From IMG/VR virus record IMGVR_UViG_3300037116_000299, positions 1-64,000 of that record: a stretch of 64,000 nt of DNA. The stretch is one strand, 5' to 3'. The position numbers were made by a program, and so were the translations under genes. Positions 7,901-59,391 of the stretch are shown piece after piece; positions within the stretch are counted from its first letter, which is position 1, and each line of letters opens with the position of its first letter. Below the pieces are notes generated by a model. It was not told the DNA's origin. It worked only from the letters and a program-made list of their open reading frames with translations, and did no database searches.

Positions 7901-8578
7901 TTGAAGGAACTGCCGTTCGATCCTTACGACTTCTTCGGCTACATCGCGTCCGGCCTCGTGCTAGTCGTAGTGGCACAACTGACCCTTGGGTTCCCGAGGG
8001 TCTTCGGTGCCGACCTCAAGCCCTTCGACATCGCAGTCACGGTGTTGGCGGTCTACATTGCCGGGCAGATCGTGGCCGGTCCAGCAAAGGCGATCTTCGA
8101 AGACTTCTTCGTACACAAGGTACTTGGCAGTCCCACAAAGAACCTTCTTCGCCCTAAGCCTCATCCCATGCTGAGGGTCATCTTCCCCGGCTTCTACAAG
8201 CCGCTCCCACCTGTCACCTGCGCAAGAATTGCCGCGAAGGCTGCCGTGGTGGCCGCCGGAGCTGAGAACGCAGAGGGCATCTTCCTAACGATCAGGTACG
8301 CCCCCGAGGTCCTCGCAAGTGCTTCCCTGATCGCCAAGATTGACACCTTCCGAGACATGTACGGTTTCAATCGCAACGTCTCGTTTAGCCTCTTGCTCGC
8401 GTCCCTCTGCCTTGCCATTGCCGGTCATGGCCAGGGCCGGGCTGAGCTTAGTCACTACGCTATCGCGGCGTTCATCTGCGGGGCACTTCTTTTCTATCGC
8501 TACCTCAAGTTCTTTCGCCAGTATTCGTATGAACTCTTCAACGTATACGCCTGCATGGGCGAGAAAGGCACGACCTGA
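7901..8578 (+). CDS. 4-TM membrane protein (YDFFG...YGFNRN type), putative defence-associated
   Basis: GGAGG SD before TTG; two TM pairs flanking a soluble loop; TGATG coupling to the MBL gene. Confidence 0.75.
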   Translation: MKELPFDPYDFFGYIASGLVLVVVAQLTLGFPRVFGADLKPFDIAVTVLAVYIAGQIVAGPAKAIFEDFFVHKVLGSPTKNLLRPKPHPMLRVIFPGFYKPLPPVTCARIAAKAAVVAAGAENAEGIFLTIRYAPEVLASASLIAKIDTFRDMYGFNRNVSFSLLLASLCLAIAGHGQGRAELSHYAIAAFICGALLFYRYLKFFRQYSYELFNVYACMGEKGTT

Positions 8579-9399
8579 TGTTCACGTTTACGTTGTTCGA
8601 TGTCGGCCATGGATTCTGCGCATACGCCACTACGCCTAAAGGGGCGAACATTCTGTTCGACTGTGGCTACGATGTTGATCTGAAGTTCTATCCATCCCGG
8701 TACTTCGCTGATCGTCGCATCACACAGATAGATCGTCTCTTTCTGAGCCACTTCGATCAGGACCACGTGTGCGACCTCCCTGATCTTCGAAAAGTGGTGA
8801 CCTTTGGGTCTATTCATCGCAACTCTTCTGTCCCAGTAGATGTCATTAGGCGTGAGAAACAGCAGGGAGGCATCGTCACGACTGCAATGGCAAGTGCCCT
8901 TGATATGCACCAGAACTGGACAGGCCAGGTGACGATGGAACCCGACTGGGGAGGGGTGACGATTAGTACCTTTTTCAACCTGTATCCCAGCTTCACGGAC
9001 ATGAACAATTTGAGCGTGGTCACCTTTCTGGAGTACGGCGGAACTGGAATCGTCATCCCCGGAGACCTTGAAGGGGAAGGTTGGTTGGAGCTTCTAAAGA
9101 ATCCGGAATTTCGTCTGTGTCTGGCTCGAACGGAAATCTTTATCGCATCGCACCACGGCAGAAACGCCGGCTATTGCGAAGAGGTTTTCAACTATTGCAA
9201 CCCGGCGATCATCATCCTGTCCGACAAGGGTATCGTTCATGGCAGTCAAGAACACGACTACACGAAACATGCGATCGGCATCCCCTGGGACGGCGGTTCA
9301 CAGACGAGGCGAGTGCTGACAACCCGGAGCGATGGTCACATTCGCATCACAAAGGAAGCGGGGAAAGGATTCTTCATCAACTCCAACGTGACACTGTAA
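8578..9399 (+). CDS. ComEC/Rec2-like metallo-beta-lactamase-fold hydrolase (stand-alone)
   Basis: FDVGHG, FDCG, SHFDQDH, PGDLE, ASHHG, TTRSDG motifs. Confidence 0.85.
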   Translation: MFTFTLFDVGHGFCAYATTPKGANILFDCGYDVDLKFYPSRYFADRRITQIDRLFLSHFDQDHVCDLPDLRKVVTFGSIHRNSSVPVDVIRREKQQGGIVTTAMASALDMHQNWTGQVTMEPDWGGVTISTFFNLYPSFTDMNNLSVVTFLEYGGTGIVIPGDLEGEGWLELLKNPEFRLCLARTEIFIASHHGRNAGYCEEVFNYCNPAIIILSDKGIVHGSQEHDYTKHAIGIPWDGGSQTRRVLTTRSDGHIRITKEAGKGFFINSNVTL

Positions 9400-23229: not shown

Positions 23230-23616
23230 CTAAACCCTCCATCCTGCAGCCGGAGCTTCTGTCTCGGCCTGTACTGCATCTGCCACGACGACCTGGGCAG
23301 GTTCCTCGATGACCAGAGCCACCGGCTCTGCCACCACAACTTCACCGACGGCGGCGATCTCCACGGCGGGTTCCGCCGGCAGATCCACTTCACCGGCGGC
23401 CGGCAACTGGATCTCGAGGCCGGTCTCGTCGAAACGAGTCTCGAGCGGGTACGAGATGATGTTCTCGGCCCTATGACCGGTCACCTTCACGAATGCCGCT
23501 TCCATGCCCAGCTCAACCACCATGTCTTCGGGGACTAAGACCTGGTTGCCGGTCCCCGTATACTCTCCGCCTGCAAACGACGGATCGAATTCCACCTTAT
23601 AGTTCAGGTTCTTCAT
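23230..23616 (-). CDS. hypothetical protein with acidic/Ala-Val-rich tail
   Basis: ATGA coupling to the upstream gene. Confidence 0.65.
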   Translation of the reverse strand: MKNLNYKVEFDPSFAGGEYTGTGNQVLVPEDMVVELGMEAAFVKVTGHRAENIISYPLETRFDETGLEIQLPAAGEVDLPAEPAVEIAAVGEVVVAEPVALVIEEPAQVVVADAVQAETEAPAAGWRV

Positions 23617-24467
23617 GACTTGCTCTCCATTAGCGGGTGGCGAATGCTGTCCCGCACTTCCAACCCGCAGGGTGTCTTCTTCGTTCCGAAGAAGTGATCA
23701 GGAAAGGGCCTGACCAGCCATGGCACGTAGAGCGCGCCGTTGATCCGGGAGACATCGACCATTTGGGGATCGATATCGCAGCCGTACAGCCTGAGCGAGT
23801 AGTTCGAGGCGTGCAACAGCATGCGGCCGGTGCCTACACACGGATCGCATACCGTCTGCGACCTCGACACCTCCTGAGGAATGCCAGTGAAGTTCATCTG
23901 AACCATGAAATCCACCACCTCATGCGGCGTGGGAAAGAAAGCGTTGGGGTTCCAGGAACCCTTGTGGCCGGCGATCCAGGATCCGAAGTAGTCGTACGGT
24001 TCGAGCAGGAATGGTCCCAGGTTGAAGGTCCGATACAGGAACTCCTGGACATCCTCCGCCAGCGCCGGCACGGCCTTGTTCAACCCAAAGCCCCAGAGCA
24101 ACCAGTCCAGAAACGTCTGCACCGGACTGGTCACCTGGTTCGCCAGGCGGTTGATGATCACATCGAGCTGCTTGTAGGCAGCTGTCCGATCGACACCGCC
24201 TGTAGGGCCAAACCTGACCTGTGGAATAGGATCGGCCAATATGCGTCCGGCTTCCATACAGCGAAACCAGTAGGTCCACCGGCCGGTCGCATCAGGATGG
24301 GTGTCCGACAGCATAAGGTAGTAGGCCAGCCATCCGCGGTACGTCCAGGGCTTGCGGGCGTCCTCGATCAGAGGGACTCGCCCGCGCGCCTTCACGAACT
24401 GCGACCACTCGCAGTCCTTGATCGGAATCACCAGGTCAAATAACGAAGGTTGTGTTGCTGTAGCCAT
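23613..24467 (-). CDS. N6-MTase-like protein, SAM-binding part only
   Basis: FFPTPHEVV, VCDPCVGTGRML, YGCDID; no NPPF/Y. Confidence 0.75.
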   Translation of the reverse strand: MATATQPSLFDLVIPIKDCEWSQFVKARGRVPLIEDARKPWTYRGWLAYYLMLSDTHPDATGRWTYWFRCMEAGRILADPIPQVRFGPTGGVDRTAAYKQLDVIINRLANQVTSPVQTFLDWLLWGFGLNKAVPALAEDVQEFLYRTFNLGPFLLEPYDYFGSWIAGHKGSWNPNAFFPTPHEVVDFMVQMNFTGIPQEVSRSQTVCDPCVGTGRMLLHASNYSLRLYGCDIDPQMVDVSRINGALYVPWLVRPFPDHFFGTKKTPCGLEVRDSIRHPLMESKS

Positions 24468-42411: not shown

Positions 42412-43368
42412 TTAGGCCTTCGCCCAGATGTCGGCTTCAACAACCTGGACACCCCAGTCGTACTTCTCCGGTCCCAGCGCGATCCAGCCTGGGTTGCCGA
42501 GCGTTGGTACGATCCGGTGATAAGCAGCATTCATGCAGTCGGCCATGATCTTCTTGACCGGCGGGATATGATCCTGACGGACGTGCATGACAATCTCGTC
42601 ATGTACGACCAGGAGGAACCTGGCATCGTAGATGAGCGGCGCCGTAAACGACCCGCCACGTACAGCCTTGTAGATCTCCGGCATCGCCATCTTCAGGATG
42701 TCGGCATTGCCGGCCTGAATTGGCATGTTGCCGGCCCACCGCTTGATCTGAGAGAGCAACTCCTCAGCTTCCGGATCCCCGGCGGCTGGCAGTTGGTAGA
42801 ACCGCTTGCGGCCGCGCGGGCTGGCGCTATAACCCAGCTCGATGGCCAGACGGCCCTGGTTGTCCAGCCAGGCCTTGAGAACCTTGAAGGTGCAGAAGAA
42901 CTCCTCGATGAAGTCTTTGGCTTCCTCGACGGTCATACCCGTCATCAGAGCCACCCGAGTGGGGCCTGCCCCGTAGGGAACGCCAAAGGTCACAGTCTTG
43001 ATGCGTGACCGGATCAGGGCGAGTTCGTTGTGGCGGGGATGGCTCTCGGTGCTGCGAGCCTCCTCCATCTCTTCGTAAGTAAACTTGAAGCGGGCGCCAA
43101 ACACCTTCGTTGCATTGAAGGTGTGAACGTCCTGTCCGGAGTTGATGGCGGCGATCAGGATGGGATCTCCCGAAGCGTGCGCCATCAGCTTTACTTCGAT
43201 CTGCGCGTAGTCCGAGGCCAGGATCTTGTAGCCTTCGTCGGCCCGGATTGCCGAGCGCGGGTCGGGGACTGACCACTCCAGGACGTTCGTCTTGAAGTTC
43301 CAGAAATAGGACTTACCTGCAAAGTCCCCGACCTTTTCCCGCTCAACCAACACTGCTGCTTCTGCCAC
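42412..43368 (-). CDS. polA: DNA polymerase A, C-terminal (palm/fingers) subunit of a split enzyme
   Basis: Motif A DYAQIE; motif B RSRIKTVTFGVPYG; GNMPIQAGNAD; motif C VHDEIV. Confidence 0.92.
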   Translation of the reverse strand: MAEAAVLVEREKVGDFAGKSYFWNFKTNVLEWSVPDPRSAIRADEGYKILASDYAQIEVKLMAHASGDPILIAAINSGQDVHTFNATKVFGARFKFTYEEMEEARSTESHPRHNELALIRSRIKTVTFGVPYGAGPTRVALMTGMTVEEAKDFIEEFFCTFKVLKAWLDNQGRLAIELGYSASPRGRKRFYQLPAAGDPEAEELLSQIKRWAGNMPIQAGNADILKMAMPEIYKAVRGGSFTAPLIYDARFLLVVHDEIVMHVRQDHIPPVKKIMADCMNAAYHRIVPTLGNPGWIALGPEKYDWGVQVVEADIWAKA

Positions 43369-43371
43369 GAT

Positions 43372-43803
43372 CTACTCCTGTGGTTCGTCGTCCCCGCGGT
43401 AAAGGCCTTCTTCTCCGCCGTTCTCATCTACCTGGCGTGCCTGTTGTTCCAGGGAAGCCCGTTGAACCTTCATGGCGTTGCGCATGTCACCTTCACTGAA
43501 GGGACATTCAAAGATCAGCTCGCCGCTTTCGCGGTAAGCAGCCCACACGGGCTCGCGCGCGATCGCCGGGAACTGTTCAGCAGCTTCCTGCATCAGGAGG
43601 ATGAAAGAGATCTCGGCATTGGCTGCGTCGATCTGTCGCTTGCGATCGGCAATGGCCGACTTACGGGCAGACGCTACAGCCAGCTCACGCTGGACCTGCA
43701 GTTCTTCGTAGCGCAACTCCAGGGCGGACTTGATCTTGTCGTCTTCGAGTTCAGATAGGCGTAACCGCAGGGGCTTGAACGCCCGACGCTTGGAATCACT
43801 CAT
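43372..43803 (-). CDS. coiled-coil hypothetical protein
   Basis: Lies between the polA halves; heptad pattern. Confidence 0.7.
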   Translation of the reverse strand: MSDSKRRAFKPLRLRLSELEDDKIKSALELRYEELQVQRELAVASARKSAIADRKRQIDAANAEISFILLMQEAAEQFPAIAREPVWAAYRESGELIFECPFSEGDMRNAMKVQRASLEQQARQVDENGGEEGLYRGDDEPQE

Positions 43804-43973
43804 AGTTCTTTCTCCATGTCTTGGTGCAGAGCCTGCACCAGGTTGTTGTCGTACCTATCCGGGGCGTGGTAAGCCCCAAGAGCAGCCACAACGAGGGCCG
43901 CGGTACGATGGTTGAGGGTAAGGACCATGTCCCCTGAAGGGGATTTGCATCCCACATAGTTGGGACTGGTCAT
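43800..43973 (-). CDS. 57-aa hypothetical protein MTSPNYVGCKSPSGDMVLTLNHRTAALVVAALG... (not in ORF track)
   Basis: ATGA overlaps at both ends. Confidence 0.6.
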   Translation of the reverse strand: MTSPNYVGCKSPSGDMVLTLNHRTAALVVAALGAYHAPDRYDNNLVQALHQDMEKEL

Positions 43974-44152
43974 GACGGGCGCACCTGGGTCTCCAGGCGT
44001 TCCGCCACGGCGATTGCAGCGTCATCGTCCGGGGAGAGAATAGCCAGAGCATCGGCGACCAAGTCGGCCGTCTTCTTGTTCATGATGAGAGTGGTTACCT
44101 CTCCCATCTCGACCACGCTCCACTGGAACTTCTTGTGCGATTCCACATTCAT
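43970..44152 (-). CDS. small hypothetical protein
   Basis: ATGA overlaps at both ends. Confidence 0.6.
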   Translation of the reverse strand: MNVESHKKFQWSVVEMGEVTTLIMNKKTADLVADALAILSPDDDAAIAVAERLETQVRPS

Positions 44153-44370
44153 GCGGCTACCTGCTCTCGCAACAGCGGAGCAATCTCGGTGGTCGAGACT
44201 GGGTTCTCCGACGAGCCGTCCCAGACATGGACACGAAGTTTGCCTTCGTAGACCTCGATGTAGATCTGGGAGGGGAAGTTGGGATCCGTATCTGGAGAGT
44301 CCCTGAATCCGCGGACTCCTATCTCCAGACCTTCAGGGCCGGTTCCAAGGGTGTCTAATTCAATGCGCAT
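44149..44370 (-). CDS. small hypothetical protein (IYIEVYEGKLRVHVWD)
   Basis: AAGGAGG SD. Confidence 0.65.
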   Translation of the reverse strand: MRIELDTLGTGPEGLEIGVRGFRDSPDTDPNFPSQIYIEVYEGKLRVHVWDGSSENPVSTTEIAPLLREQVAA

Positions 44371-44372
44371 CG

Positions 44373-45797
44373 TTAGGCAGCCTCCTTGAGCTGCTGGCTT
44401 TCGACGGCCAGGCGTTCTGCACGCATGGCTGCGATCTGTGCTCCGAATGCCGACATGACATGCTCGATCTCTTCGGGCCGGCGCACCGGGGCGTACAGCT
44501 CCTTCGGCTTCGGAAACTGCTGTGCATCAGAGCTGAAGCGTCCGGTCGCGATCGTGGCCTTGTCTTCCCCGCCACTCTTGCGTCCTTCTTCTTCCCCTGA
44601 GCCCAGCTGCTTGAAGCGAGGGTGCCACTTGCCGGTGTGCTGGTTGATCTTGTCGACCATGTTGGTGCCGTAGGTCGAGGTCATCTTGGTGACGTTCGAG
44701 AACTCGGCCATCAGCTTGCACATCTCGCGCTGTTCCGGAGAGAAGTCCTTGCCCTTGACCTTGTTCTTGGTGACGTCCTTGAGGGTGTCGCGGCGAATGT
44801 CATCGAGATTGATATCGATCTCGCGCAAAGCGGCCAGCTTCTCGGCGTTCGACTTGAGGTTGAATACCGAGTCCAGTCCGGGGATCAACGATCCAACCAG
44901 ACTTCCCTGCTGCTTCTTCATCGCCGTGAACAGCTTGAAGATCTTCTCGCCGAGGTCGGACTCATGCTGCGTCCAATACTCGATGATCTGGCGCATGATC
45001 GGCACGCTCAGGTTGACGCCGTGGATCTCCATCTCCGCGGTGGGGAAGATGACATCGAACTCATCCCTGGCAGTGTCCAGAAGCTGCCACTGTTTCAGCA
45101 GCTTAGACTGGTCCTGCATCAGCGGGAACATCAGCACGATATCCCGGGCAGAGTAGTACGCCATGCTGCGCGTCAGCTTCCTCCGCTCGTCATCGAGACC
45201 GATGAACATGTCGCGTACGGCCTTGTTGATCAACCAGTAAGGCTCATGCCGGCGAACGCAGTCCGCCAGGCCTACCTTCATGGCCAGAAGCCCGGCAACC
45301 AGGATCTGTTCGGCGAGCATGGAGCAGTAAACCCGCTGCATGTGGACGCCGTACTTGACCAGGAGCCACTTGAAGTCATAGATCGCGTTGTGCAGCAGGT
45401 GTAGGAACTTGTCCGACTCCAGCCACGCTTTGAACTCGACCACCAGGTCGGGATCGATCAGATAGACCTGGTCCTCGTTGCCGATCTGGAACAACACCAT
45501 CCGGGTATCCGGATTGACCGGGTTCATCGAATAGCCCTTGTCGCCCTTGACGGTGCGGCCGGTGGTCTCGGTGTCGATTCCATGGATCCGGATGCGGTCC
45601 AGGAACTCTTTAATTGGGGCCAGGTCTCCAGTCGAGGTGACCTGGATGACCTGGTTTTGATCCCAGGCCCCAGGTTCCCACGCACTTTGCAGCCAATCCG
45701 GCCGGCCAACGATGCGATAGTTCACTGGAACGTGCATCTCCAGTGGAGTACACACCGGACCACGGGAGTGACCGCTACTGCGTCCTCTAGGTGCCAT
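44373..45797 (-). CDS. polA: DNA polymerase A, N-terminal subunit (3'-5' exonuclease + thumb)
   Basis: Exo I IDTETTG, Exo II HNAIYD, Exo III YSARD; EMEIHGV; FNLKS; TYG; HPRFKQ; ATGRFSS..QQFP. Confidence 0.92.
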   Translation of the reverse strand: MAPRGRSSGHSRGPVCTPLEMHVPVNYRIVGRPDWLQSAWEPGAWDQNQVIQVTSTGDLAPIKEFLDRIRIHGIDTETTGRTVKGDKGYSMNPVNPDTRMVLFQIGNEDQVYLIDPDLVVEFKAWLESDKFLHLLHNAIYDFKWLLVKYGVHMQRVYCSMLAEQILVAGLLAMKVGLADCVRRHEPYWLINKAVRDMFIGLDDERRKLTRSMAYYSARDIVLMFPLMQDQSKLLKQWQLLDTARDEFDVIFPTAEMEIHGVNLSVPIMRQIIEYWTQHESDLGEKIFKLFTAMKKQQGSLVGSLIPGLDSVFNLKSNAEKLAALREIDINLDDIRRDTLKDVTKNKVKGKDFSPEQREMCKLMAEFSNVTKMTSTYGTNMVDKINQHTGKWHPRFKQLGSGEEEGRKSGGEDKATIATGRFSSDAQQFPKPKELYAPVRRPEEIEHVMSAFGAQIAAMRAERLAVESQQLKEAA

Positions 45798-51680: not shown

Positions 51681-52781
51681 CTAGTTCTCCTCTTCGTCCG
51701 TTGTTCCCTGCTTGAACTTCAGGGTGTTGATGTCGTCTGCCTTGTCCAGCTCGCCCTCGCGCGAACCCAGATAGACCGGCTGATACAGCGAGCCACCGGG
51801 GTAGGCATAGAGATAGCGAACCTCGATCAGATCACCCTCGTTCGGGATACCAAAGTTGGGGAGGATGGTGACGTTGCCGACACCCACCAGTTCCTTGCCG
51901 TTCTCCATACCCAGCACTACGCTGCGCTTGCCATCGTTGATGGAACGCACGAAGCAGGTGCAGCTCTGAACGAACTTGAACTTGAGCTGATTACCACCGC
52001 TATTCGGGCGACCAGGGACGTAGGGCGCGCCGCGGCGCTTGAATACCACGCCCTCTGCCCGCTGCTCACGAAGCCGATTGTAGGCAGAGCGTTTCGACTC
52101 CCGGCCGCGGAAGGTGAAGACCCTGCAGACCTGGGGATACGGCGCCATCTTGTCCTCGGTATCGAAGAAAGCCGACAGAGCGACCTCGCGCGAGACAACA
52201 TCTTCCTGAGTGAGATCCTGGCCATGAAGCGACAGGATGTCGAACAGGAAGTAGGTGTCGCCAACGGCTTCGCCATCGAGGACTGCTGACTTGTCGCCGA
52301 GACGATCCTTCAAGCGCTGTTCGATGAAGGTGGAGATCGGAACGATCAGGCCCTTGCGGTTCGAACCCGTGATCACTTTGTTGGCAGCCTCGGTCATCAG
52401 CCGGACGCCGTCCTTCTTTTCCTGCATGATCCAATCGTCGTCTGCAATCAAGCGCTCAACCATATCCTCGTCGATGGCATTGAGCAGCTGGGGCACACGG
52501 CCGGATACCTGGCCGGCAAGCTCGGTGCCTGCGTAGGGCGTGCCGTCTTCGCCAGGGGTATAACCCTTGGCGGTCTTCTCAGCAACCAGCTTGAGGTAGA
52601 TCTTCTGGGCCTTGTCCTCGTCGACCGGACTGGCGGTCTTGGTGCCGGTCTGTAACGTAGAACCGCGGCGGCCGTATTGGAAGTTGACGACGAATCCGCC
52701 ATCTGCCTTCTCAATTTGAGCGTGATAGACCTTGTCGCTACCACCGTCACGGTAGTAGAGACTCGTTGTTTGAACTGACAT
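51681..52781 (-). CDS. WGR-domain ATP-dependent DNA/RNA ligase
   Basis: SDKVY..QYGRRG; QEKKDGVR; LDGE; FDIL; EGVVFK; KFKF; short OB-like tail. Confidence 0.85.
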   Translation of the reverse strand: MSVQTTSLYYRDGGSDKVYHAQIEKADGGFVVNFQYGRRGSTLQTGTKTASPVDEDKAQKIYLKLVAEKTAKGYTPGEDGTPYAGTELAGQVSGRVPQLLNAIDEDMVERLIADDDWIMQEKKDGVRLMTEAANKVITGSNRKGLIVPISTFIEQRLKDRLGDKSAVLDGEAVGDTYFLFDILSLHGQDLTQEDVVSREVALSAFFDTEDKMAPYPQVCRVFTFRGRESKRSAYNRLREQRAEGVVFKRRGAPYVPGRPNSGGNQLKFKFVQSCTCFVRSINDGKRSVVLGMENGKELVGVGNVTILPNFGIPNEGDLIEVRYLYAYPGGSLYQPVYLGSREGELDKADDINTLKFKQGTTDEEEN

Positions 52782-53410: not shown

Positions 53411-53797
53411 CTAACCCTCCGTCCCCGTAAGAGCCATTGCAACTCCCGCGGCCGCCTTGATGGCATGCCGCTTGCGGAAATGGAGTGGGGACTTCTGCTC
53501 AACCCGCCGCAGTTCGCGCTGGGTTTCCTCGTCGAAGTCCAGATCACAGGTGTCACAGAGAGCAAGGAGCGTAACCCCAATGCCTCCCATTTCCTGATAC
53601 ACCATGCCAACCGGCCGGCTGTAGACACGCTCGACCAACTTCAAAGCATCGTCCTTGGTCACTTCCAAGGCCTGGTTCAGCTCAAGTGTCTCTTCGAGGA
53701 ACCGTTTGGCGCGTTCCTGGCGCGAGTAATATACCGAAGCACCGAAGCAGTTGATGACCCAGTGACGAATTCGAGTCGTCAGTCCTGTCAAATCCAT
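53411..53797 (-). CDS. MazG-like nucleotide pyrophosphohydrolase
   Basis: W..FG..ERAKRFLEETLEL..QEMGG..TL; TAATG coupling. Confidence 0.7.
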   Translation of the reverse strand: MDLTGLTTRIRHWVINCFGASVYYSRQERAKRFLEETLELNQALEVTKDDALKLVERVYSRPVGMVYQEMGGIGVTLLALCDTCDLDFDEETQRELRRVEQKSPLHFRKRHAIKAAAGVAMALTGTEG

Positions 53798-54846
53798 TAC
53801 GCGGCACTCCTTTGGCTCCGGATCCCCTGGACCCGGTTGCATATCTTATGAACGGAGGCGACCGCGGCCGACAGCTGCAGGCCCGTCTCCGGGGTATTGT
53901 GATCGGTCAGTTCATGAATGAACTCGGCCAGCAGGTCCGCGCGAGACGGCGGACAGTTGGCTTCCAGCAGCTTCTTGCGGAAGAACCCGCTCAGAATGAT
54001 CCGGATATCCGCACCATCCCGCGGCTCAGCGCCCTCGAGCAACTCGCGCGCCTCAAACCAGTTGCCCTGGATCACGGCGCCGCACAGCTTGCCGACGTTG
54101 ATCTTGCCGGAGATCGTAGGAATGACGGCCGACTCTTCCGGGGTCATGCCTTTGGCCAGGTTCTCCACGGCCGTGACGATGTCGCCTGGCGCGTTGATAC
54201 CGCGACCGATGAGCAGCGCTTCGAGCTGGGCCAGGTCGGTATCTTTCCAGCCGCCTTGGGGCTCGGCGTGCGGCACGACCTTGACGATCAGGTCCTTGAC
54301 CTCCCAGGGCATCAGGCCTCCCAGGACATAGCGGGCAGACATGCACCGCTTCATCAACTCGGCGCGCAGCTTGGTTGGATCGCTGGTACAGAACATGAAG
54401 AGGTTGTTGCCGTCCGGACTCTCCACCGGCTTGAGCAGGACGCTCTGGGCGGCCGTGTGCATCGCCTGGCACTCATCGAAGATGAGCGAGCGGAAAGAGC
54501 CGTACGCCGGCGCGTAAGGAAGAATCGCCAGCATGTCCCGGATCTCATCCGCTGATCCTTCTGCGGCACAGTTGCGATCCAGGATCTCCATGTCCGCTTC
54601 GTGGGCCAGGCAGTCGTCGCAGGGCTCCCCAAAGGGAGCATGCTGACAGTTGACCGAGACCGCAATGATCTTTGCCAACGTGGTCTTGCCCCCGCGGGAC
54701 ATGCCCTCAAAGAGCATCGCCGTGGGCACACGACCGGAGGAGAACTGATTGCGCAACTGGTGGATGACGTTCTCGTAACCGACCACTTCGCTGAAGCGGC
54801 GGGGGCGAAGGGCAGCACTGAGATTGCGTGTGATTTCCTGGATCAT
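53797..54846 (-). CDS. dnaX: clamp loader large subunit (DnaX gamma/tau-like)
   Basis: LRPRRFSEVVG, GGKTTLAKI, NC..PCDDC, FDECQ, LLKPVE, KRC. Confidence 0.88.
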   Translation of the reverse strand: MIQEITRNLSAALRPRRFSEVVGYENVIHQLRNQFSSGRVPTAMLFEGMSRGGKTTLAKIIAVSVNCQHAPFGEPCDDCLAHEADMEILDRNCAAEGSADEIRDMLAILPYAPAYGSFRSLIFDECQAMHTAAQSVLLKPVESPDGNNLFMFCTSDPTKLRAELMKRCMSARYVLGGLMPWEVKDLIVKVVPHAEPQGGWKDTDLAQLEALLIGRGINAPGDIVTAVENLAKGMTPEESAVIPTISGKINVGKLCGAVIQGNWFEARELLEGAEPRDGADIRIILSGFFRKKLLEANCPPSRADLLAEFIHELTDHNTPETGLQLSAAVASVHKICNRVQGIRSQRSAA

Positions 54847-54849
54847 TTG

Positions 54850-55110
54850 TTACTCCTCATTCGAATCTGGCCGGGTATCCAGATGACAGCAGTTCCGGCA
54901 TTCATAGTGGCCATCGCCCTTACAGTCGTTCCAGTCGCCCAGCTGATGCGGCCGCGGCGAGTAGGAAGCGCAAGGCATCTCTGGATCCCGGTTCCCCGGA
55001 ACTCCTACAGGTTTGCGGCGGTCCGGTGAGCCTTTCGCCCAGCGGCGGTAAGCGAACAGCGCCACCCGCTTCCAGAACGACTTGAAGCTCAGATCGAGTG
55101 TCAACGTCAT
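54850..55110 (-). CDS. small Cys/His-rich protein
   Basis: PC..CKGDGHYECRNC. Confidence 0.6.
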   Translation of the reverse strand: MTLTLDLSFKSFWKRVALFAYRRWAKGSPDRRKPVGVPGNRDPEMPCASYSPRPHQLGDWNDCKGDGHYECRNCCHLDTRPDSNEE

Positions 55111-55604
55111 ACCGCCACCGCCTCCGCCACTGCACCAACCACCTTGTCCGGCGTCACGGGTTTGATCGTTTCGATGAACATGGTGTAGACGGGCTTGCGA
55201 CCTGCCTTCTCGGCAGCGTGCAGCATCGTCCTGTTCTTCACGTAGATCCCGCTCGACAGTGTGGTGCAGTCCTCTTCCAGCACCCAGGCTTTCACCTGGT
55301 CGTACATCTGCTGGTAGATTCCATTGCCGCGCCGAAGTGGATCGACCCAGGACATGGTGATGAAAGCATCCTTGCGATACTCGAAGGGCTTCCAGGACAT
55401 GAAGCCCACCAGCCTGTGTGCCGGGTCACCGTTGAAGTGATTCGCCTTGGCCTCGCGGACCAGCAGGACGTGATCTTCCCAGCTCATGGACTGCTCAAAA
55501 CGATCGGCATACTCCGTGCGTGCGAGTTCCGAGTAGACCCCCATAGCCAGGCCCCATTGGCCTGACATGATGATCTTGTTGAAGCGTTCAAATACCAGTT
55601 CCAT
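55107..55604 (-). CDS. GNAT acetyltransferase
   Basis: WVDPLRRGNGI; N..M..K.G. Confidence 0.8.
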   Translation of the reverse strand: MELVFERFNKIIMSGQWGLAMGVYSELARTEYADRFEQSMSWEDHVLLVREAKANHFNGDPAHRLVGFMSWKPFEYRKDAFITMSWVDPLRRGNGIYQQMYDQVKAWVLEEDCTTLSSGIYVKNRTMLHAAEKAGRKPVYTMFIETIKPVTPDKVVGAVAEAVAV

Positions 55605-55617
55605 TACTGCCTCTTCT

Positions 55618-56841
55618 CTACTGTTTATCTGGACGCATGCGGTGGAAGACCGGGAACTTGAGGCTGTTCTTCTCCGTGATGCCCTTGTGCTTGACCTCGA
55701 CGACCTTGCCCACCAGCGTTCCGGCCTGGAACTCGACCCAGAGCGCGATCCGTTCCTTGTTGTCGAAGCCGGTACCGACCTCGCTGGTCACCGTGACGGT
55801 GGGAAAGACGCTCTGGCCGATCAGGTCAGGAGCGATGTTGCCATCGTCCTGCAGGAAACCAAAGACCATGAGCCCGCCCAGCATGCCGGCGCATTTACCC
55901 CGGCCCTCGTAGGCACCCTCGATCTTGAAATCGCCATCCTTCATGTCGGCGATGAAGTCACCCGTAAACTCGGGCTTCCACTTCAGCCACACGCCGGACT
56001 TGCGATATTCGTAGAGGCCGTCGGCACGCTTGACAACGATGCCTTCCTTGCCTTTCTCGATGACCTGGAGACGGGCATAATCGATGATGTTCTCGAGGGC
56101 GCCCTCCTCGTACGGATTCTCCTGGATCTTGCAATCTGGACCGTTCACCTTCTGAATGAGTGTGACGATCTGCCTCAGATTCACCTTGCGACGAGATAGA
56201 AGGTCCCTGCATGTCGTGGCATCAAACTCTGCTTTCGGCAGAACGTCCCAAACCTTGTAAACGAAGCCCTCGGCTTGTGGATCGTCCTCGTGCAGTCGGA
56301 GCAGTCCGCCGGCTGCATTGAAATCCAGGGTCAGATGGACAATCTCTCCATCGAGCACAATGTCGTCACAGGACTCGTACGCAGCGGCCGCGGCTTCAAG
56401 CTGTGCTTGGATAAACCGCACGTTATGGTGAGGCAGGCCCGTTGACGTCAAAAGCTCGGCTTTCCCGTTCTTGATATGAGCGGGGCAGCGGTAGCCATCT
56501 TCCTTGGGCTCGAAATAGACCCAGGTCCAGTCTTTGGGCGGTTTCGCAGGGTCATAGACCTTGCAGAGCTGGATGCCTTCACGCTTGCGGCGGACCACGA
56601 CAGGACCCTGCTTCAGGAGTGCCGGCCACGGCGTTTCAGGGCTGCAGTCCATCGGGATTGTCATAGGGGCATCACCGAAACACGCCCGGACGTCGGCTCC
56701 GGCCTGCGCCAGGGACTGAAGAATGACCTCCTTCACCGGCGAAGAAGGTGCTCTCAGTACGATCTCGTCATGTACTGTGGCGACCACATACTGCTTCAGA
56801 TCTTCCGGTATGCAATCAAACAGCGTTGGGTTCGTGTTCAT
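55618..56841 (-). CDS. ATP-dependent DNA ligase with N-terminal PolA-motif-C-like segment
   Basis: EPKEDGYR, LDGEI, WD, EGIVVK, WLKWK, EVGTGF, LKFPVF..RPDK; N-terminal VHDEIV. Confidence 0.9.
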   Translation of the reverse strand: MNTNPTLFDCIPEDLKQYVVATVHDEIVLRAPSSPVKEVILQSLAQAGADVRACFGDAPMTIPMDCSPETPWPALLKQGPVVVRRKREGIQLCKVYDPAKPPKDWTWVYFEPKEDGYRCPAHIKNGKAELLTSTGLPHHNVRFIQAQLEAAAAAYESCDDIVLDGEIVHLTLDFNAAGGLLRLHEDDPQAEGFVYKVWDVLPKAEFDATTCRDLLSRRKVNLRQIVTLIQKVNGPDCKIQENPYEEGALENIIDYARLQVIEKGKEGIVVKRADGLYEYRKSGVWLKWKPEFTGDFIADMKDGDFKIEGAYEGRGKCAGMLGGLMVFGFLQDDGNIAPDLIGQSVFPTVTVTSEVGTGFDNKERIALWVEFQAGTLVGKVVEVKHKGITEKNSLKFPVFHRMRPDKQ

Positions 56842-57280: not shown

Positions 57281-58006
57281 CTACATCATGCCGAGACCCT
57301 TCGCCTCGCGATTCTCCCTGGCCTCTACGGCCAGTTCGGTAATGCGGTTCTGTTCGATGAACTCGCGCTTGAAGTAATCGAGCGCGCGCTCTACGACCGC
57401 GTTCTTGTCCATCGAAGGCTTCTTTACCACCCAGACCGGATCGACCATGCAAAAGACCGGAACGCCCGGCAGGTACGAAGTCTCGAACCACTGGGCATCG
57501 TGGGTCTTCGCCTTCGGCTTGTCGTTGGGCGTGTCCCCGGTCCCCAGCAGGGCGGACGCGGCCACCCAGCCCAGGGCAATCACTGCCTTGAGATTGGGCA
57601 TGGCGCGCAGGACGCGCAGGCAGCGTGGGCCAAAGCAGGCCGAGATCTCGGTGGCTTCCGGCTCACGCTGGATCTCCTCGATTCCCTTCTTGACCTTGGG
57701 AGGCATGCATTGAATCACCGAAGTGATGAAGACGTCTTTCTGGGTGTCCAGACCGATGAGCTTCATCCACTGCTCGAAGGCGCGGCCGTGGGCGCCCACC
57801 AGGGCGACACCTCGTTCGCTCTCCGATTCGCGCGGAGCCTCATTGACAAAGGCCAGCTCGGCGAAGGGATTACCGCGGTAGATGAAGCCGCGGTTGTAAG
57901 GATGGAGCATGCTGAGGCGGCAGTTCTGACAGGCCGAGGAGATCGACTTGATCACCTCGGCCACGTCTTCCTGCTCGACCTCAACGCTATCGAATAAAGT
58001 TGCCAT
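57281..58006 (-). CDS. family 4 uracil-DNA glycosylase-like protein (Fe-S Cys kept, active site divergent)
   Basis: CQNCRL, GNP, VNEAP, QCMPP, EISAC, ALGWVA. Confidence 0.85.
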   Translation of the reverse strand: MATLFDSVEVEQEDVAEVIKSISSACQNCRLSMLHPYNRGFIYRGNPFAELAFVNEAPRESESERGVALVGAHGRAFEQWMKLIGLDTQKDVFITSVIQCMPPKVKKGIEEIQREPEATEISACFGPRCLRVLRAMPNLKAVIALGWVAASALLGTGDTPNDKPKAKTHDAQWFETSYLPGVPVFCMVDPVWVVKKPSMDKNAVVERALDYFKREFIEQNRITELAVEARENREAKGLGMM

Positions 58007-58164: not shown

Positions 58165-59391
58165 TTACTGCCAGACGGGCATAATGACGTACCGCGACTC
58201 GACAGCATCGTCGACATCGTCTACGACCAGGCCCTTGTTGAACTTGGCCTTGTCGTTGTAGTCGTGAATGCCAATCCGCAGTGTCTCCTTTGAGGAAGTG
58301 CTGGCTGCATTCTTGAGGTAGTCGAGGTTGACCGTGACCTTGACGTCCAGGTTCTCCGGCACACCTGCTTCCAGCGTGATCGGCATCTCGTCCGAGATAT
58401 CCGACACGTTCAGCTTGTTGTGGGCCGAGATCTTCAGCGTCTTGCCGTAGATCTCAAGGTGAGCCAAGCGGGCATCGTCGAAAGCGGTGACGCGGCCGAG
58501 GATCTGGCACAGCTCCTCGCGGTTGACGGTGAACCAGTAATCCGGCACGTGCATGTCGATGGTTTTCCCGATATCCGGGAACTTGCCAATCAGCAGGCGG
58601 GTACCAAAGAACGTGTCTTCGCCCATCCGGAAGAAGAGCTTGGAAATGTCGCCGGTGGCGTTTCGTGCGCCCTCGATAACACGAACGTCCTCTTCCTTGC
58701 GCACCAACTTGGCGAGCGAAGGCAGGGCCACGTCCGGGATCAGGATGTTCTCCATCTCCTTGGGACCCTTCTGGCCCTTGATGACGATCCGGGCGCAAGC
58801 GTGCGCATCGGTCGCATGGGCCTCGTAGCCACGGTCGGTAGACACCAGCTTCATGCCGCTGAAAGCAAAGCGCTGGGTGGCCTCGTTCTCGCGTGGGATA
58901 CAGAACTGTGCCCGGCGCACGAACTCGTTCAAATCCTTGCCCTTGACCGTGTAGCTGGGCGCTTGCTTGAACGGAATGGCATTCATCCTGGAAGCCATGA
59001 TGTCGGTTCCCTTGGAGTCGTAACCCAGGTGGAAGACGTTACGACCGATCTTCACCCGGATCCGGGAAGGCTTGTCGCTGCTGCCGGCCTTGCCCTTGCT
59101 GGGCGAGACCAGTTCAATCTCGGCGAGATCGCCAGGATTGCGGCTCTGCAGCCCGGCGCGGAGCTGATCCGGATCAAGCAGGGTCATGCCGGCCATTTCA
59201 ACGGTGGCCTGAAGCTTCACGGTGGACTCGGCAGTGATGTTGGTCGAGTACAGGAAGACGGCAGACGAAGTCTCGGTCTTGTGGACCGATACGAAGATGC
59301 CGCCGGTGCCTGCATCCTTCTTCTTATCGATGGTCGCTGAGACCTTGTTGACGGCGTCGAGTAAATCGCCGGCTTTGACACTGAACTTCAT
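58165..59391 (-). CDS. dnaN: DNA polymerase sliding clamp (beta subunit-like)
   Basis: MKFSV..L..V; ATDAH; TRLLIGKFPD; VNLDYL; YVIMPV. Confidence 0.88.
   Translation of the reverse strand: MKFSVKAGDLLDAVNKVSATIDKKKDAGTGGIFVSVHKTETSSAVFLYSTNITAESTVKLQATVEMAGMTLLDPDQLRAGLQSRNPGDLAEIELVSPSKGKAGSSDKPSRIRVKIGRNVFHLGYDSKGTDIMASRMNAIPFKQAPSYTVKGKDLNEFVRRAQFCIPRENEATQRFAFSGMKLVSTDRGYEAHATDAHACARIVIKGQKGPKEMENILIPDVALPSLAKLVRKEEDVRVIEGARNATGDISKLFFRMGEDTFFGTRLLIGKFPDIGKTIDMHVPDYWFTVNREELCQILGRVTAFDDARLAHLEIYGKTLKISAHNKLNVSDISDEMPITLEAGVPENLDVKVTVNLDYLKNAASTSSKETLRIGIHDYNDKAKFNKGLVVDDVDDAVESRYVIMPVWQ

What the first reader, a model, noticed from the sequence alone, without database searches (positions are those of the whole stretch)
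56620..56841. DNA ligase carries a copy of the PolA motif-C/C-terminal segment at its N-terminus
Seen: ligase residues ~18-72 (VVATVHDEIVLRAPSSPVKEVILQSLAQA..PMTIPMD..W) parallel the end of PolA-C (LLVVHDEIVMHVRQDHIPPVKKIMADCMNAA..W). The 14-mer ATCTCGTCATGTAC is identical at 42593-42606 and 56762-56775. Inference: either a relic of an ancestral pol-lig junction or duplication, or a functional module that lets the ligase dock onto or swap into the split polymerase, coupling gap filling to sealing.
Basis: partly seen in the sequence, partly recalled or inferred. Interest (0 to 1): 0.62.

Follow-up and report, generated by a model that had tools for sequence, protein, structure and literature searches.

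The report
Phage ligase with PolA-like N-terminal insert
A jumbo-phage DNA ligase has a real, translated 79-residue N-terminal arm containing a short stretch that weakly resembles the catalytic "motif C" hairpin of family A DNA polymerases. That stretch is a fast-evolving, clade-specific insert and not a recent copy of the phage's own polymerase; the better-conserved feature is a terminal docking peptide that the neighbouring uracil-DNA glycosylase also carries.

Summary
The ligase ORF (55618-56841, minus strand, 407 aa) starts at 56841. Its N-terminus is conserved in orthologs, and in two relatives the start overlaps the stop of the UDG gene.

Residues ~13-50 match family A polymerase motif C weakly but consistently:
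- Pfam PF00476 gives E 0.11, 0.032 and 0.0025 in three orthologs.
- All 45 PDB hits of the module profile are family A polymerases.
- hhalign against the phage PolA-C family gives P 2.7e-4.
- At most 1 of 3000 shuffles reaches the real score.

No test is decisive. The shared 14-mer is at chance level, and DNA identity ends with the VHDEI(V) codons. The rest of the claimed parallel (residues 51-72, ending in W) is not conserved.

The module occurs in only one ligase clade and evolves about 8 times faster than the core. HDE becomes HDA or PDE in orthologs. Relatives that lack the module have the same split PolA, so nothing supports docking into the polymerase.

The oldest and most conserved element is the terminal peptide P-x-L-[FW]-D. 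The adjacent UDG carries it too (M[AF]TLFD, conserved), as does a DNA methyltransferase. I read it as a probable docking peptide for the phage's beta-type clamp; this is inferred, and the co-fold gave no verdict.

Interest is modest.

The parts
55618..56841 (-). ATP-dependent DNA ligase ORF, 407 aa. The NTase and OB core spans residues ~78-407; the motif I lysine is K113 (EPKEDG).
   Evidence: Pfam PF01068 46.9 bits and PF14743 38.9 bits, both above cut-off. Foldseek gives E 1e-20 to Prochlorococcus, T4 and Lig E ligases. 20 orthologs were aligned.
56815..56841 (-). N-terminal peptide, residues 1-9 (M-N-T-N-P-T-L-F-D). It is a conserved terminal short linear motif, P-x-L-[FW]-D.
   Evidence: P5, L7 and D9 are invariant in the long-form orthologs. 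The motif is also present in distant short-form ligases (MSPFLWD, SEYLWD). dN is 0.04-0.2 here, against 0.5-1.3 in the rest of the extension.
56692..56805 (-). PolA motif-C-like module, residues 13-50. It is predicted as helix 13-18, beta-hairpin 19-23/26-29 with H24-D25 at the turn, then helix 36-46.
   Evidence: AF2 full-length model, pLDDT 53-77. Pfam PF00476 positions 324-367 match at E 0.0025-0.11. PDB profile hits are all family A polymerases. hhalign P 2.7e-4.
56605..56691 (-). Hypervariable, probably disordered linker, residues 51-79. It precedes the conserved KxGPVV start of the ligase core.
   Evidence: pLDDT below 50. It is rich in indels and unconserved. dN is 1.3 against the closest relative.
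56762..56775 (+). 14-mer ATCTCGTCATGTAC. Its reverse complement encodes V-H-D-E-I of the ligase.
   Evidence: at chance level.
42593..42606 (+). The same 14-mer, here encoding V-H-D-E-I of PolA-C motif C.
42412..43368 (-). PolA-C: the C-terminal piece of a split family A polymerase (motifs A, B and C), 318 aa. The region compared with the ligase is residues 242-292, i.e. 42493-42645.
   Evidence: PF00476 159.6 bits, profile positions 142-361. 187 homologs of similar length. Alignment A3.
44373..45797 (-). PolA-N: 3'-5' exonuclease plus the N-terminal part of the polymerase domain.
   Evidence: PF01612 at E 1.7e-9; PF00476 positions 28-132.
57281..58006 (-). Family-4-type uracil-DNA glycosylase. 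Its N-terminus (M-A-T-L-F-D) carries the same terminal motif as the ligase.
   Evidence: PF03167 56.5 bits. Orthologs in L004, L006 and L009 start M-F-T-L-F-D.
58165..59391 (-). Phage-encoded beta-type (DnaN-like) sliding clamp, the candidate partner of the terminal motif.
   Evidence: PF02767 31.3 bits. It is syntenic with UDG and ligase in relatives.
53797..54846 (-). Clamp-loader-like AAA+ protein.
   Evidence: The orthologs in L004 and L005 carry PF13177.
23613..24467 (-). N6 DNA methyltransferase-like ORF. Its N-terminus contains Q-P-S-L-F-D.
   Evidence: No ortholog was found in G001 or G002, so its conservation is untested.

Best explanation
The window is the first 64 kb of a 214-kb phage record. 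Its replicative ATP-dependent DNA ligase carries a real, translated 79-residue N-terminal arm made of three layers.

(1) Residues 1-9 are an old terminal peptide, P-x-L-[FW]-D. The neighbouring UDG also has it at its N-terminus, and so does a DNA methyltransferase. It most likely docks these DNA-processing enzymes onto a shared replisome partner, and the phage's own beta-type sliding clamp is the best candidate. That step is inferred, not shown.

(2) Residues ~13-50 are an insertion found in one ligase clade only. It is predicted as helix, beta-hairpin, helix. Its best match anywhere is the motif C hairpin plus following helix of family A polymerases. The most likely origin is a captured and now decaying fragment of the 3' end of some polA gene. 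It is non-catalytic and acts at most as a small structured spacer.

(3) Residues 51-79 are a hypervariable, disordered linker to the NTase domain.

The arm therefore works as a tether, comparable to the N-terminal PIP-box arm of eukaryotic ligase I. It is not a polymerase part.
For: The start is real:
- The N-terminus is conserved in orthologs.
- The start overlaps the UDG stop in L004 and L006.
- AAGGAA lies upstream of the ATG.
- dN is lower than dS in residues 1-50.

PolA likeness:
- Pfam PF00476 positions 324-367 are the top or joint-top hit for three orthologs.
- PDB profile searches return family A polymerases at motif C.
- hhalign gives P 2.7e-4.
- Shuffles reach the real score in at most 1/3000 trials for the three closest orthologs.
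- PolA-C is the best non-self hit in the six-frame genome.
- AF2 places H24-D25 at a hairpin turn followed by a helix.

Clade-specific and weakly constrained:
- The six long-arm ligases form one clade, support 80/81.
- dN is 0.52 for the module against 0.068 for the core.
- HDE becomes HDA or PDE.

Terminal motif:
- It is shared by ligase and UDG and conserved in four genomes.
- The methyltransferase has QPSLFD.
- The bacterial clamp-binding consensus is QL(S/D)LF (PMC9690074).
- Clamp and clamp-loader genes sit in the same conserved cluster.
Against: - Every PolA match is below curated or conventional significance: 12-17 bits against the 34.3-bit cut-off, and PDB E values of 0.16-2.7.
- Single-sequence phmmer against the PDB does not find PolA.
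- The three best orthologs are related, so they are not independent tests.
- The N-terminal arm folded alone is low-confidence, pLDDT 58.
- Clamp binding is untested: the co-fold of the clamp with ligase residues 1-32 gave no verdict.
- The motif has N/S-P-T/F in place of Q-L-S/D.
- Other partners, such as SSB or the polymerase, are not excluded.
Confidence: 0.5

Rival explanations
1. Chance or convergent resemblance. The module is an ordinary clade-specific insert (a beta-hairpin with an acidic turn, then a helix) with no evolutionary link to any polymerase. VHDEIV is a coincidental hexapeptide.
For: - All E-values are marginal.
- The 14-mer is at chance level.
- Single-sequence searches miss PolA.
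- The region evolves fast, so an old signal should have decayed.
- The pair was selected after the fact.
Against: - PolA is the top family in Pfam, in the PDB and in the phage's own six-frame proteome, each time at the same motif C position.
- The best Pfam score comes from P0002, which has the least of the hexapeptide (THDEIT). There the match runs on through the helix and last strand, profile positions 332-367.
- The predicted secondary structure agrees with PolA.
Confidence: 0.35
2. One reading: the module lets the ligase dock onto, or swap into, the split PolA, coupling gap filling to sealing.
For: - Both are replication enzymes of one phage and the polymerase is split.
- The hairpin core (D25, P32, E38) is invariant in five orthologs.
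- PolA-C lineage members carry [GN]-P-x-L-[FY]-D just before motif C, resembling the ligase N-terminal peptide.
Against: - Relatives without the module have the same split PolA.
- PolA-C has its own complete motif C and C-terminus in all full-length relatives.
- The module lacks motifs A and B.
- Its catalytic residues drift.
- It evolves quickly.
- It is not confidently folded alone.
Confidence: 0.07
3. Annotation artefact: translation starts downstream (M60 or M64), and the PolA-like stretch is untranslated leader.
For: In-frame ATGs exist at residues 60 and 64, with a GGTGA upstream. Most ligase orthologs are ~60-75 residues shorter.
Against: - The N-terminal peptide and hairpin are conserved at the protein level across genomes that differ heavily at synonymous sites.
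- The start overlaps the UDG stop in two relatives.
- M60 and M64 are not conserved.
Confidence: 0.03

Closest known systems
Family A DNA polymerase palm, motif C hairpin plus following helix (Klenow, Taq, Bst Pol I)
   Same: Both have a strand, H-D-E turn, strand, then a helix. Profile matches fall at Pfam PF00476 positions 324-367 and at Bst residues 534-585. The L-x-x-P after the second strand resembles Bst and Taq L-E-A-P.
   Different: Only ~35-45 residues match. Motifs A and B are absent. Scores are far below the family cut-off. The catalytic D/E pair is not conserved across orthologs. The segment sits at the N-terminus of a ligase.
Eukaryotic DNA ligase I and archaeal ligases with a terminal PCNA-interacting peptide. 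That ligase I carries the peptide at its N-terminus is from my own knowledge; PIP motifs in general are reviewed in PMC9690074.
   Same: A short hydrophobic/aromatic peptide at the extreme N-terminus is followed by a flexible arm and then the catalytic core. The same kind of peptide is present on a UDG.
   Different: The clamp here is beta-type (DnaN-like), not PCNA. The motif is P-x-L-[FW]-D, not Qxx[LIM]xx[FY][FY] or QL(S/D)LF. Binding has not been shown.
T4 DNA ligase and Prochlorococcus/Lig E-type minimal ATP-dependent ligases
   Same: The NTase plus OB core is shared; Foldseek gives E 1e-17 to 1e-20. T4 ligase also contacts its sliding clamp (PMC6212786, title and abstract).
   Different: T4 has an alpha-helical DNA-binding domain at its N-terminus. 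This ligase has no such domain, only a peptide, a small insert and a linker.
Fusions of replication and repair domains in phage enzymes, e.g. family A polymerases fused to UDG (PMC13697223, abstract)
   Same: A phage replication enzyme carries a piece of another replication or repair protein.
   Different: Those fusions carry whole, active domains. Here only a non-catalytic fragment-sized likeness is present.

Membership tests
ATP-dependent DNA ligase (NTase plus OB fold) | Nucleotidyltransferase domain with the motif I lysine (KxDG) | tested here: met
   PF01068 46.9 bits against a 26.2-bit cut-off. E111, K113 and R118 are invariant and G116 is conserved in at least 90% of 21 sequences.
ATP-dependent DNA ligase (NTase plus OB fold) | C-terminal OB-fold domain | tested here: met
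   PF14743 38.9 bits against a 28-bit cut-off. Foldseek matches solved ligases at E down to 1e-20.
Family A DNA polymerase (for the N-terminal module) | Profile match above the family's curated threshold | tested here: not met
   11.9, 13.6 and 17.2 bits against a 34.3-bit cut-off. Only positions 324-367 of 381 are matched.
Family A DNA polymerase (for the N-terminal module) | Conserved catalytic motif C (H-D-E) together with motifs A and B | tested here: not met
   HDE is present in the window, P0001 and P0002, but is HDA in P0004 and PDE in P0005. No motif A or B is present in the ligase.
Family A DNA polymerase (for the N-terminal module) | Strand-turn-strand-helix topology of the palm around motif C | tested here: inconclusive
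   The full-length AF2 model gives E19-23, E26-29 and H36-46 at pLDDT 53-77. The arm folded alone gives no strands, pLDDT 58.
Beta-clamp-binding peptide (QL(S/D)LF type) | Short consensus-like hydrophobic peptide at a protein terminus | tested here: inconclusive
   N-P-T-L-F in the ligase, A-T-L-F in UDG and Q-P-S-L-F in the methyltransferase, against the consensus QL(S/D)LF. The match is partial.
Beta-clamp-binding peptide (QL(S/D)LF type) | Conserved in orthologs and shared by several clamp-client enzymes of one genome | tested here: met
   Ligase. UDG in four genomes. Other LFD instances were rejected: 8578-9399 lies inside a metallo-beta-lactamase fold, and 145845 is internal to a longer frame.
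Beta-clamp-binding peptide (QL(S/D)LF type) | Physical binding to the clamp's hydrophobic cleft | tested here: inconclusive
   The co-fold of the clamp with ligase residues 1-32 scored 0.22, below the 0.34 mark: no verdict.

The most novel reading that the evidence does not exclude
The ligase arm mimics the polymerase's own partner-binding surface. PolA-C proteins of this phage lineage carry a conserved [GN]-P-x-L-[FY]-D loop six residues before the motif C strand. The ligase has N-P-T-L-F-D followed by a motif-C-like hairpin, and the UDG has T-L-F-D. If that loop is how the split polymerase holds the phage clamp (or another hub), then ligase and UDG would compete for the same site. That would give an ordered polymerase-to-UDG/ligase hand-off, built from a borrowed piece of the polymerase.
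Probability: 0.1. Interest if true: 0.6.

Novelty: new variant of a known kind. Interest (0 to 1): 0.3.

Why it matters
If the module really derives from polA, it is a small, datable example of a catalytic-core fragment captured as a non-catalytic spacer in another replication enzyme. It would also show how quickly such relics decay.

The shared N-terminal peptide on ligase and UDG is of more practical use. It gives a testable handle on how an uncultured jumbo-phage replisome with a beta-type clamp recruits its nick-sealing and uracil-repair enzymes.

Neither point changes current understanding of ligases or polymerases.

Tried and rejected
- Co-fold of the phage clamp with ligase residues 1-32: score 0.22, below the mark, no verdict. 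It is not evidence either way.
- AF2 of the arm alone: pLDDT 58 and pTM 0.24, too poor for a fold search, so none was run on it.
- Single-sequence phmmer of the window arm and the P0002 arm against the PDB: no PolA hits.
- Profile search of the module in the own genome through the genome search: only the module itself. A --max hmmsearch in the sandbox then put PolA-C second at E 0.13.
- Close-relative scans of IMG/VR with the ligase and with PolA-C: nothing. The alignment-based scan added only short-form ligases.
- ESM Atlas feature search of residues 1-79: the nearest clusters are unnamed short viral proteins. One 73-aa cluster with PF00476 in 12% of members sits at rank 23 with score 0.87; this is a lead only.
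- Other N-terminal LFD ORFs were rejected as motif instances: 8578-9399 (metallo-beta-lactamase fold), and 145845-146672 (internal to a longer frame and not conserved).
- The idea that relatives have a PolA-C lacking motif C, with the ligase complementing it, was rejected. The short PolA-C hits are contig-end truncations or one frameshifted sequence, P0050.
- The contig behind L004 could not be searched whole.

Full report
**Context.** The window is the first 64 kb of a 214.3-kb virus record. It holds a replication module, all on the minus strand:
- a beta-type sliding clamp (58165-59391);
- a family-4-type UDG (57281-58006);
- the ligase (55618-56841);
- a GNAT (55107-55604);
- a clamp-loader-like AAA+ protein (53797-54846);
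- a second, WGR-containing ligase-like protein (51681-52781).

About 12 kb away lies a family A polymerase split into PolA-N (44373-45797) and PolA-C (42412-43368), with a 143-aa ORF between the two pieces. The same gene order (clamp, UDG, ligase, loader, second ligase) recurs in metagenomic relatives.

The 14-mer carries no weight. The window contains 21 direct matches of 14 nt or more, against 6-18 in shuffled sequence. Codon-by-codon comparison shows DNA identity only in the V-H-D-E-I(V) codons. There has therefore been no recent DNA duplication.

BLASTP aligns ligase residues 3-57 with PolA-C residues 242-292 at E 0.10.

**Is the segment translated?** Yes.
- Twenty orthologs were found. 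The ligase core begins at residue ~78 (K-x-G-P-V-V...), and the six most closely branching ligases have arms of 59-81 residues.
- The extreme N-terminus is conserved: P5, L7 and D9 are invariant.
- In L004 and L006 the ligase start overlaps the UDG stop.
- The window has AAGGAA just upstream of the ATG.
- The alternative starts M60 and M64 are not conserved.

**Is it PolA-like?** Weakly, but consistently.
- Pfam PF00476 is the top or joint-top family for the arms of the window, P0001 and P0002, at E 0.11, 0.032 and 0.0025. It always matches profile positions 324-367 of 381, i.e. motif C through the last strand.
- A profile of five arms finds mainly family A polymerases at the top of the PDB, with Bst residues 534-585 at E 0.16.
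- A profile trimmed to the module finds only family A polymerases: 45 of 45 hits, at E 0.8-2.7.
- hhalign against the phage's PolA-C family gives P 6e-4 and 2.7e-4, with probabilities of 28% and 42%.
- Against a PolA-C HMM, 0/3000, 0/3000 and 1/3000 shuffles reach the real scores of the three closest arms. For P0004 and P0005 the counts are 21 and 41 of 3000.
- In a six-frame search of the whole genome, PolA-C motif C is the best non-self hit. E is 0.13, or 0.25 with the window left out of the profile.
- AF2 on the full ligase predicts helix 13-18, strands 19-23 and 26-29 with H24-D25 at the turn, and helix 36-46, at pLDDT 53-77.

Several points weigh against the likeness:
- Every score is below threshold.
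- Single sequences do not find PolA in the PDB.
- The arm folded alone is poor.
- The pair was chosen after scanning many proteins.

I put descent from a polA fragment at roughly 55-65%.

The scores are no better against the phage's own PolA-C family (7-8 bits) than against the generic Pfam model (12-17 bits). The invariant L-x-x-P after the hairpin resembles Bst-type Pol I rather than the phage's own PolA-C. If a donor existed, nothing identifies it as this phage's polymerase.

**How does it evolve?**
- The six long-arm ligases form one clade, with support 80/81. All other orthologs lack the module.
- Within the clade, HDE becomes HDA in P0004 and PDE in P0005, and is unrecognisable in P0007.
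- Between the window and its closest relative, dN is 0.068 in the core, 0.52 in residues 13-50 and 1.3 in residues 51-79. The L004/L006 pair gives the same picture.
- Residues 51-79 have pLDDT below 50.
- Two relatives whose ligase lacks the module (G001, G002) have the same split PolA, broken at the same Pfam position.
- All full-length PolA-C relatives keep their own motif C and C-terminus.

A role as a part or docking piece of the split polymerase is therefore unsupported.

**What is conserved?** The terminal peptide P-x-L-[FW]-D.
- It also occurs in distant short-form ligases (MSPFLWD, SEYLWD), so it predates the module.
- The UDG gene next door starts M-A-T-L-F-D in the window and M-F-T-L-F-D in three relatives.
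- A DNA methyltransferase-like ORF starts with ...Q-P-S-L-F-D.
- L[FW]D is rare in this proteome: 23 occurrences in about 68,000 residues of a crude gene set.
- The bacterial clamp-binding consensus is QL(S/D)LF (PMC9690074).

By analogy with the PCNA-binding N-termini of eukaryotic ligase I and of UDGs (my own knowledge), I infer a docking peptide for the phage clamp. The one co-fold I could run gave no verdict, so this remains an inference.

One more observation: PolA-C proteins of this lineage carry [GN]-P-x-L-[FY]-D six residues before motif C. This is the stretch BLAST paired with the ligase's T-N-P-T-L-F-D. It could be coincidence, or the same partner motif inside the polymerase; that is the novel case.

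**Verdict.** The feature is real and the arm is translated. The PolA likeness is genuine at the level of "best match anywhere" but statistically marginal. It is confined to ~35-45 residues, is not a copy of the phage's own polymerase, and shows no sign of being needed by the split polymerase. The arm is best read as a tether, made of a docking peptide, a decaying small insert of probable polA origin and a disordered linker. That makes it a new variant of a known kind, of modest interest.

Noticed in passing
window 57281-58006 (-); L004 9279-10004; L006 8981-9706; L009 1734-2459: The UDG next to the ligase starts with M-[AF]-T-L-F-D in all four genomes. This is the same terminal motif as the ligase's P-T-L-F-D / P-F-L-W-D, so the two probably share a docking peptide.
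   Followed up: partly
window 23613-24467 (-): An N6 DNA methyltransferase-like ORF has an N-terminal Q-P-S-L-F-D, close to the bacterial clamp-binding consensus QL(S/D)LF. No ortholog was found in G001 or G002 to test conservation.
   Followed up: partly
window 51681-52781 (-); L005 4888-5988; L004 13644-14753; L009 5741-6835: There is a second ligase-like gene in the same module: a WGR domain fused to an ATP-dependent ligase/RNA-ligase-type NTase domain. It is conserved in relatives, so the phage has two NTase-type ligases.
   Followed up: no
window 42412-45797 (-); G001:C1:97115-99241; G002:C1:150140-152266: The family A polymerase is split between Pfam positions ~132 and 142, just before motif A. 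A 143-aa ORF with no Pfam match (43372-43803) lies between the halves. The same split occurs in relatives, and 187 PolA-C-sized homologs exist in metagenomes.
   Followed up: partly
PolA-C family (alignment A3; window residues ~244-249 = 42623-42640): This lineage has a conserved [GN]-P-x-L-[FY]-D-A-R (or T-W-E-D-A-R) loop immediately before the motif C strand. It is aromatic-acidic, like the ligase and UDG terminal peptides.
   Followed up: partly
P0050 (254 aa, on a 258-kb contig): A close relative's PolA-C diverges into unrelated sequence after F-Y-T-L-P. It looks like a frameshift, either an assembly error or a broken gene.
   Followed up: no
ligase N-termini of P0004 vs P0019/P0020 (L004 10001-; L009 2938-): The first ~20 residues (S-P-F-L-W-D..L..P-E-G-x-Q-V-V-E) are much more alike than the ~45%-identical cores, although the proteins sit in different clades. 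Synonymous divergence in the arm also exceeds that of the core. Both points hint at recombinational exchange of 5' ends.
   Followed up: no
window 55107-55604 (-): A GNAT acetyltransferase gene sits immediately downstream of the ligase. It is conserved in L005 but absent at that position in L004 and L009.
   Followed up: no
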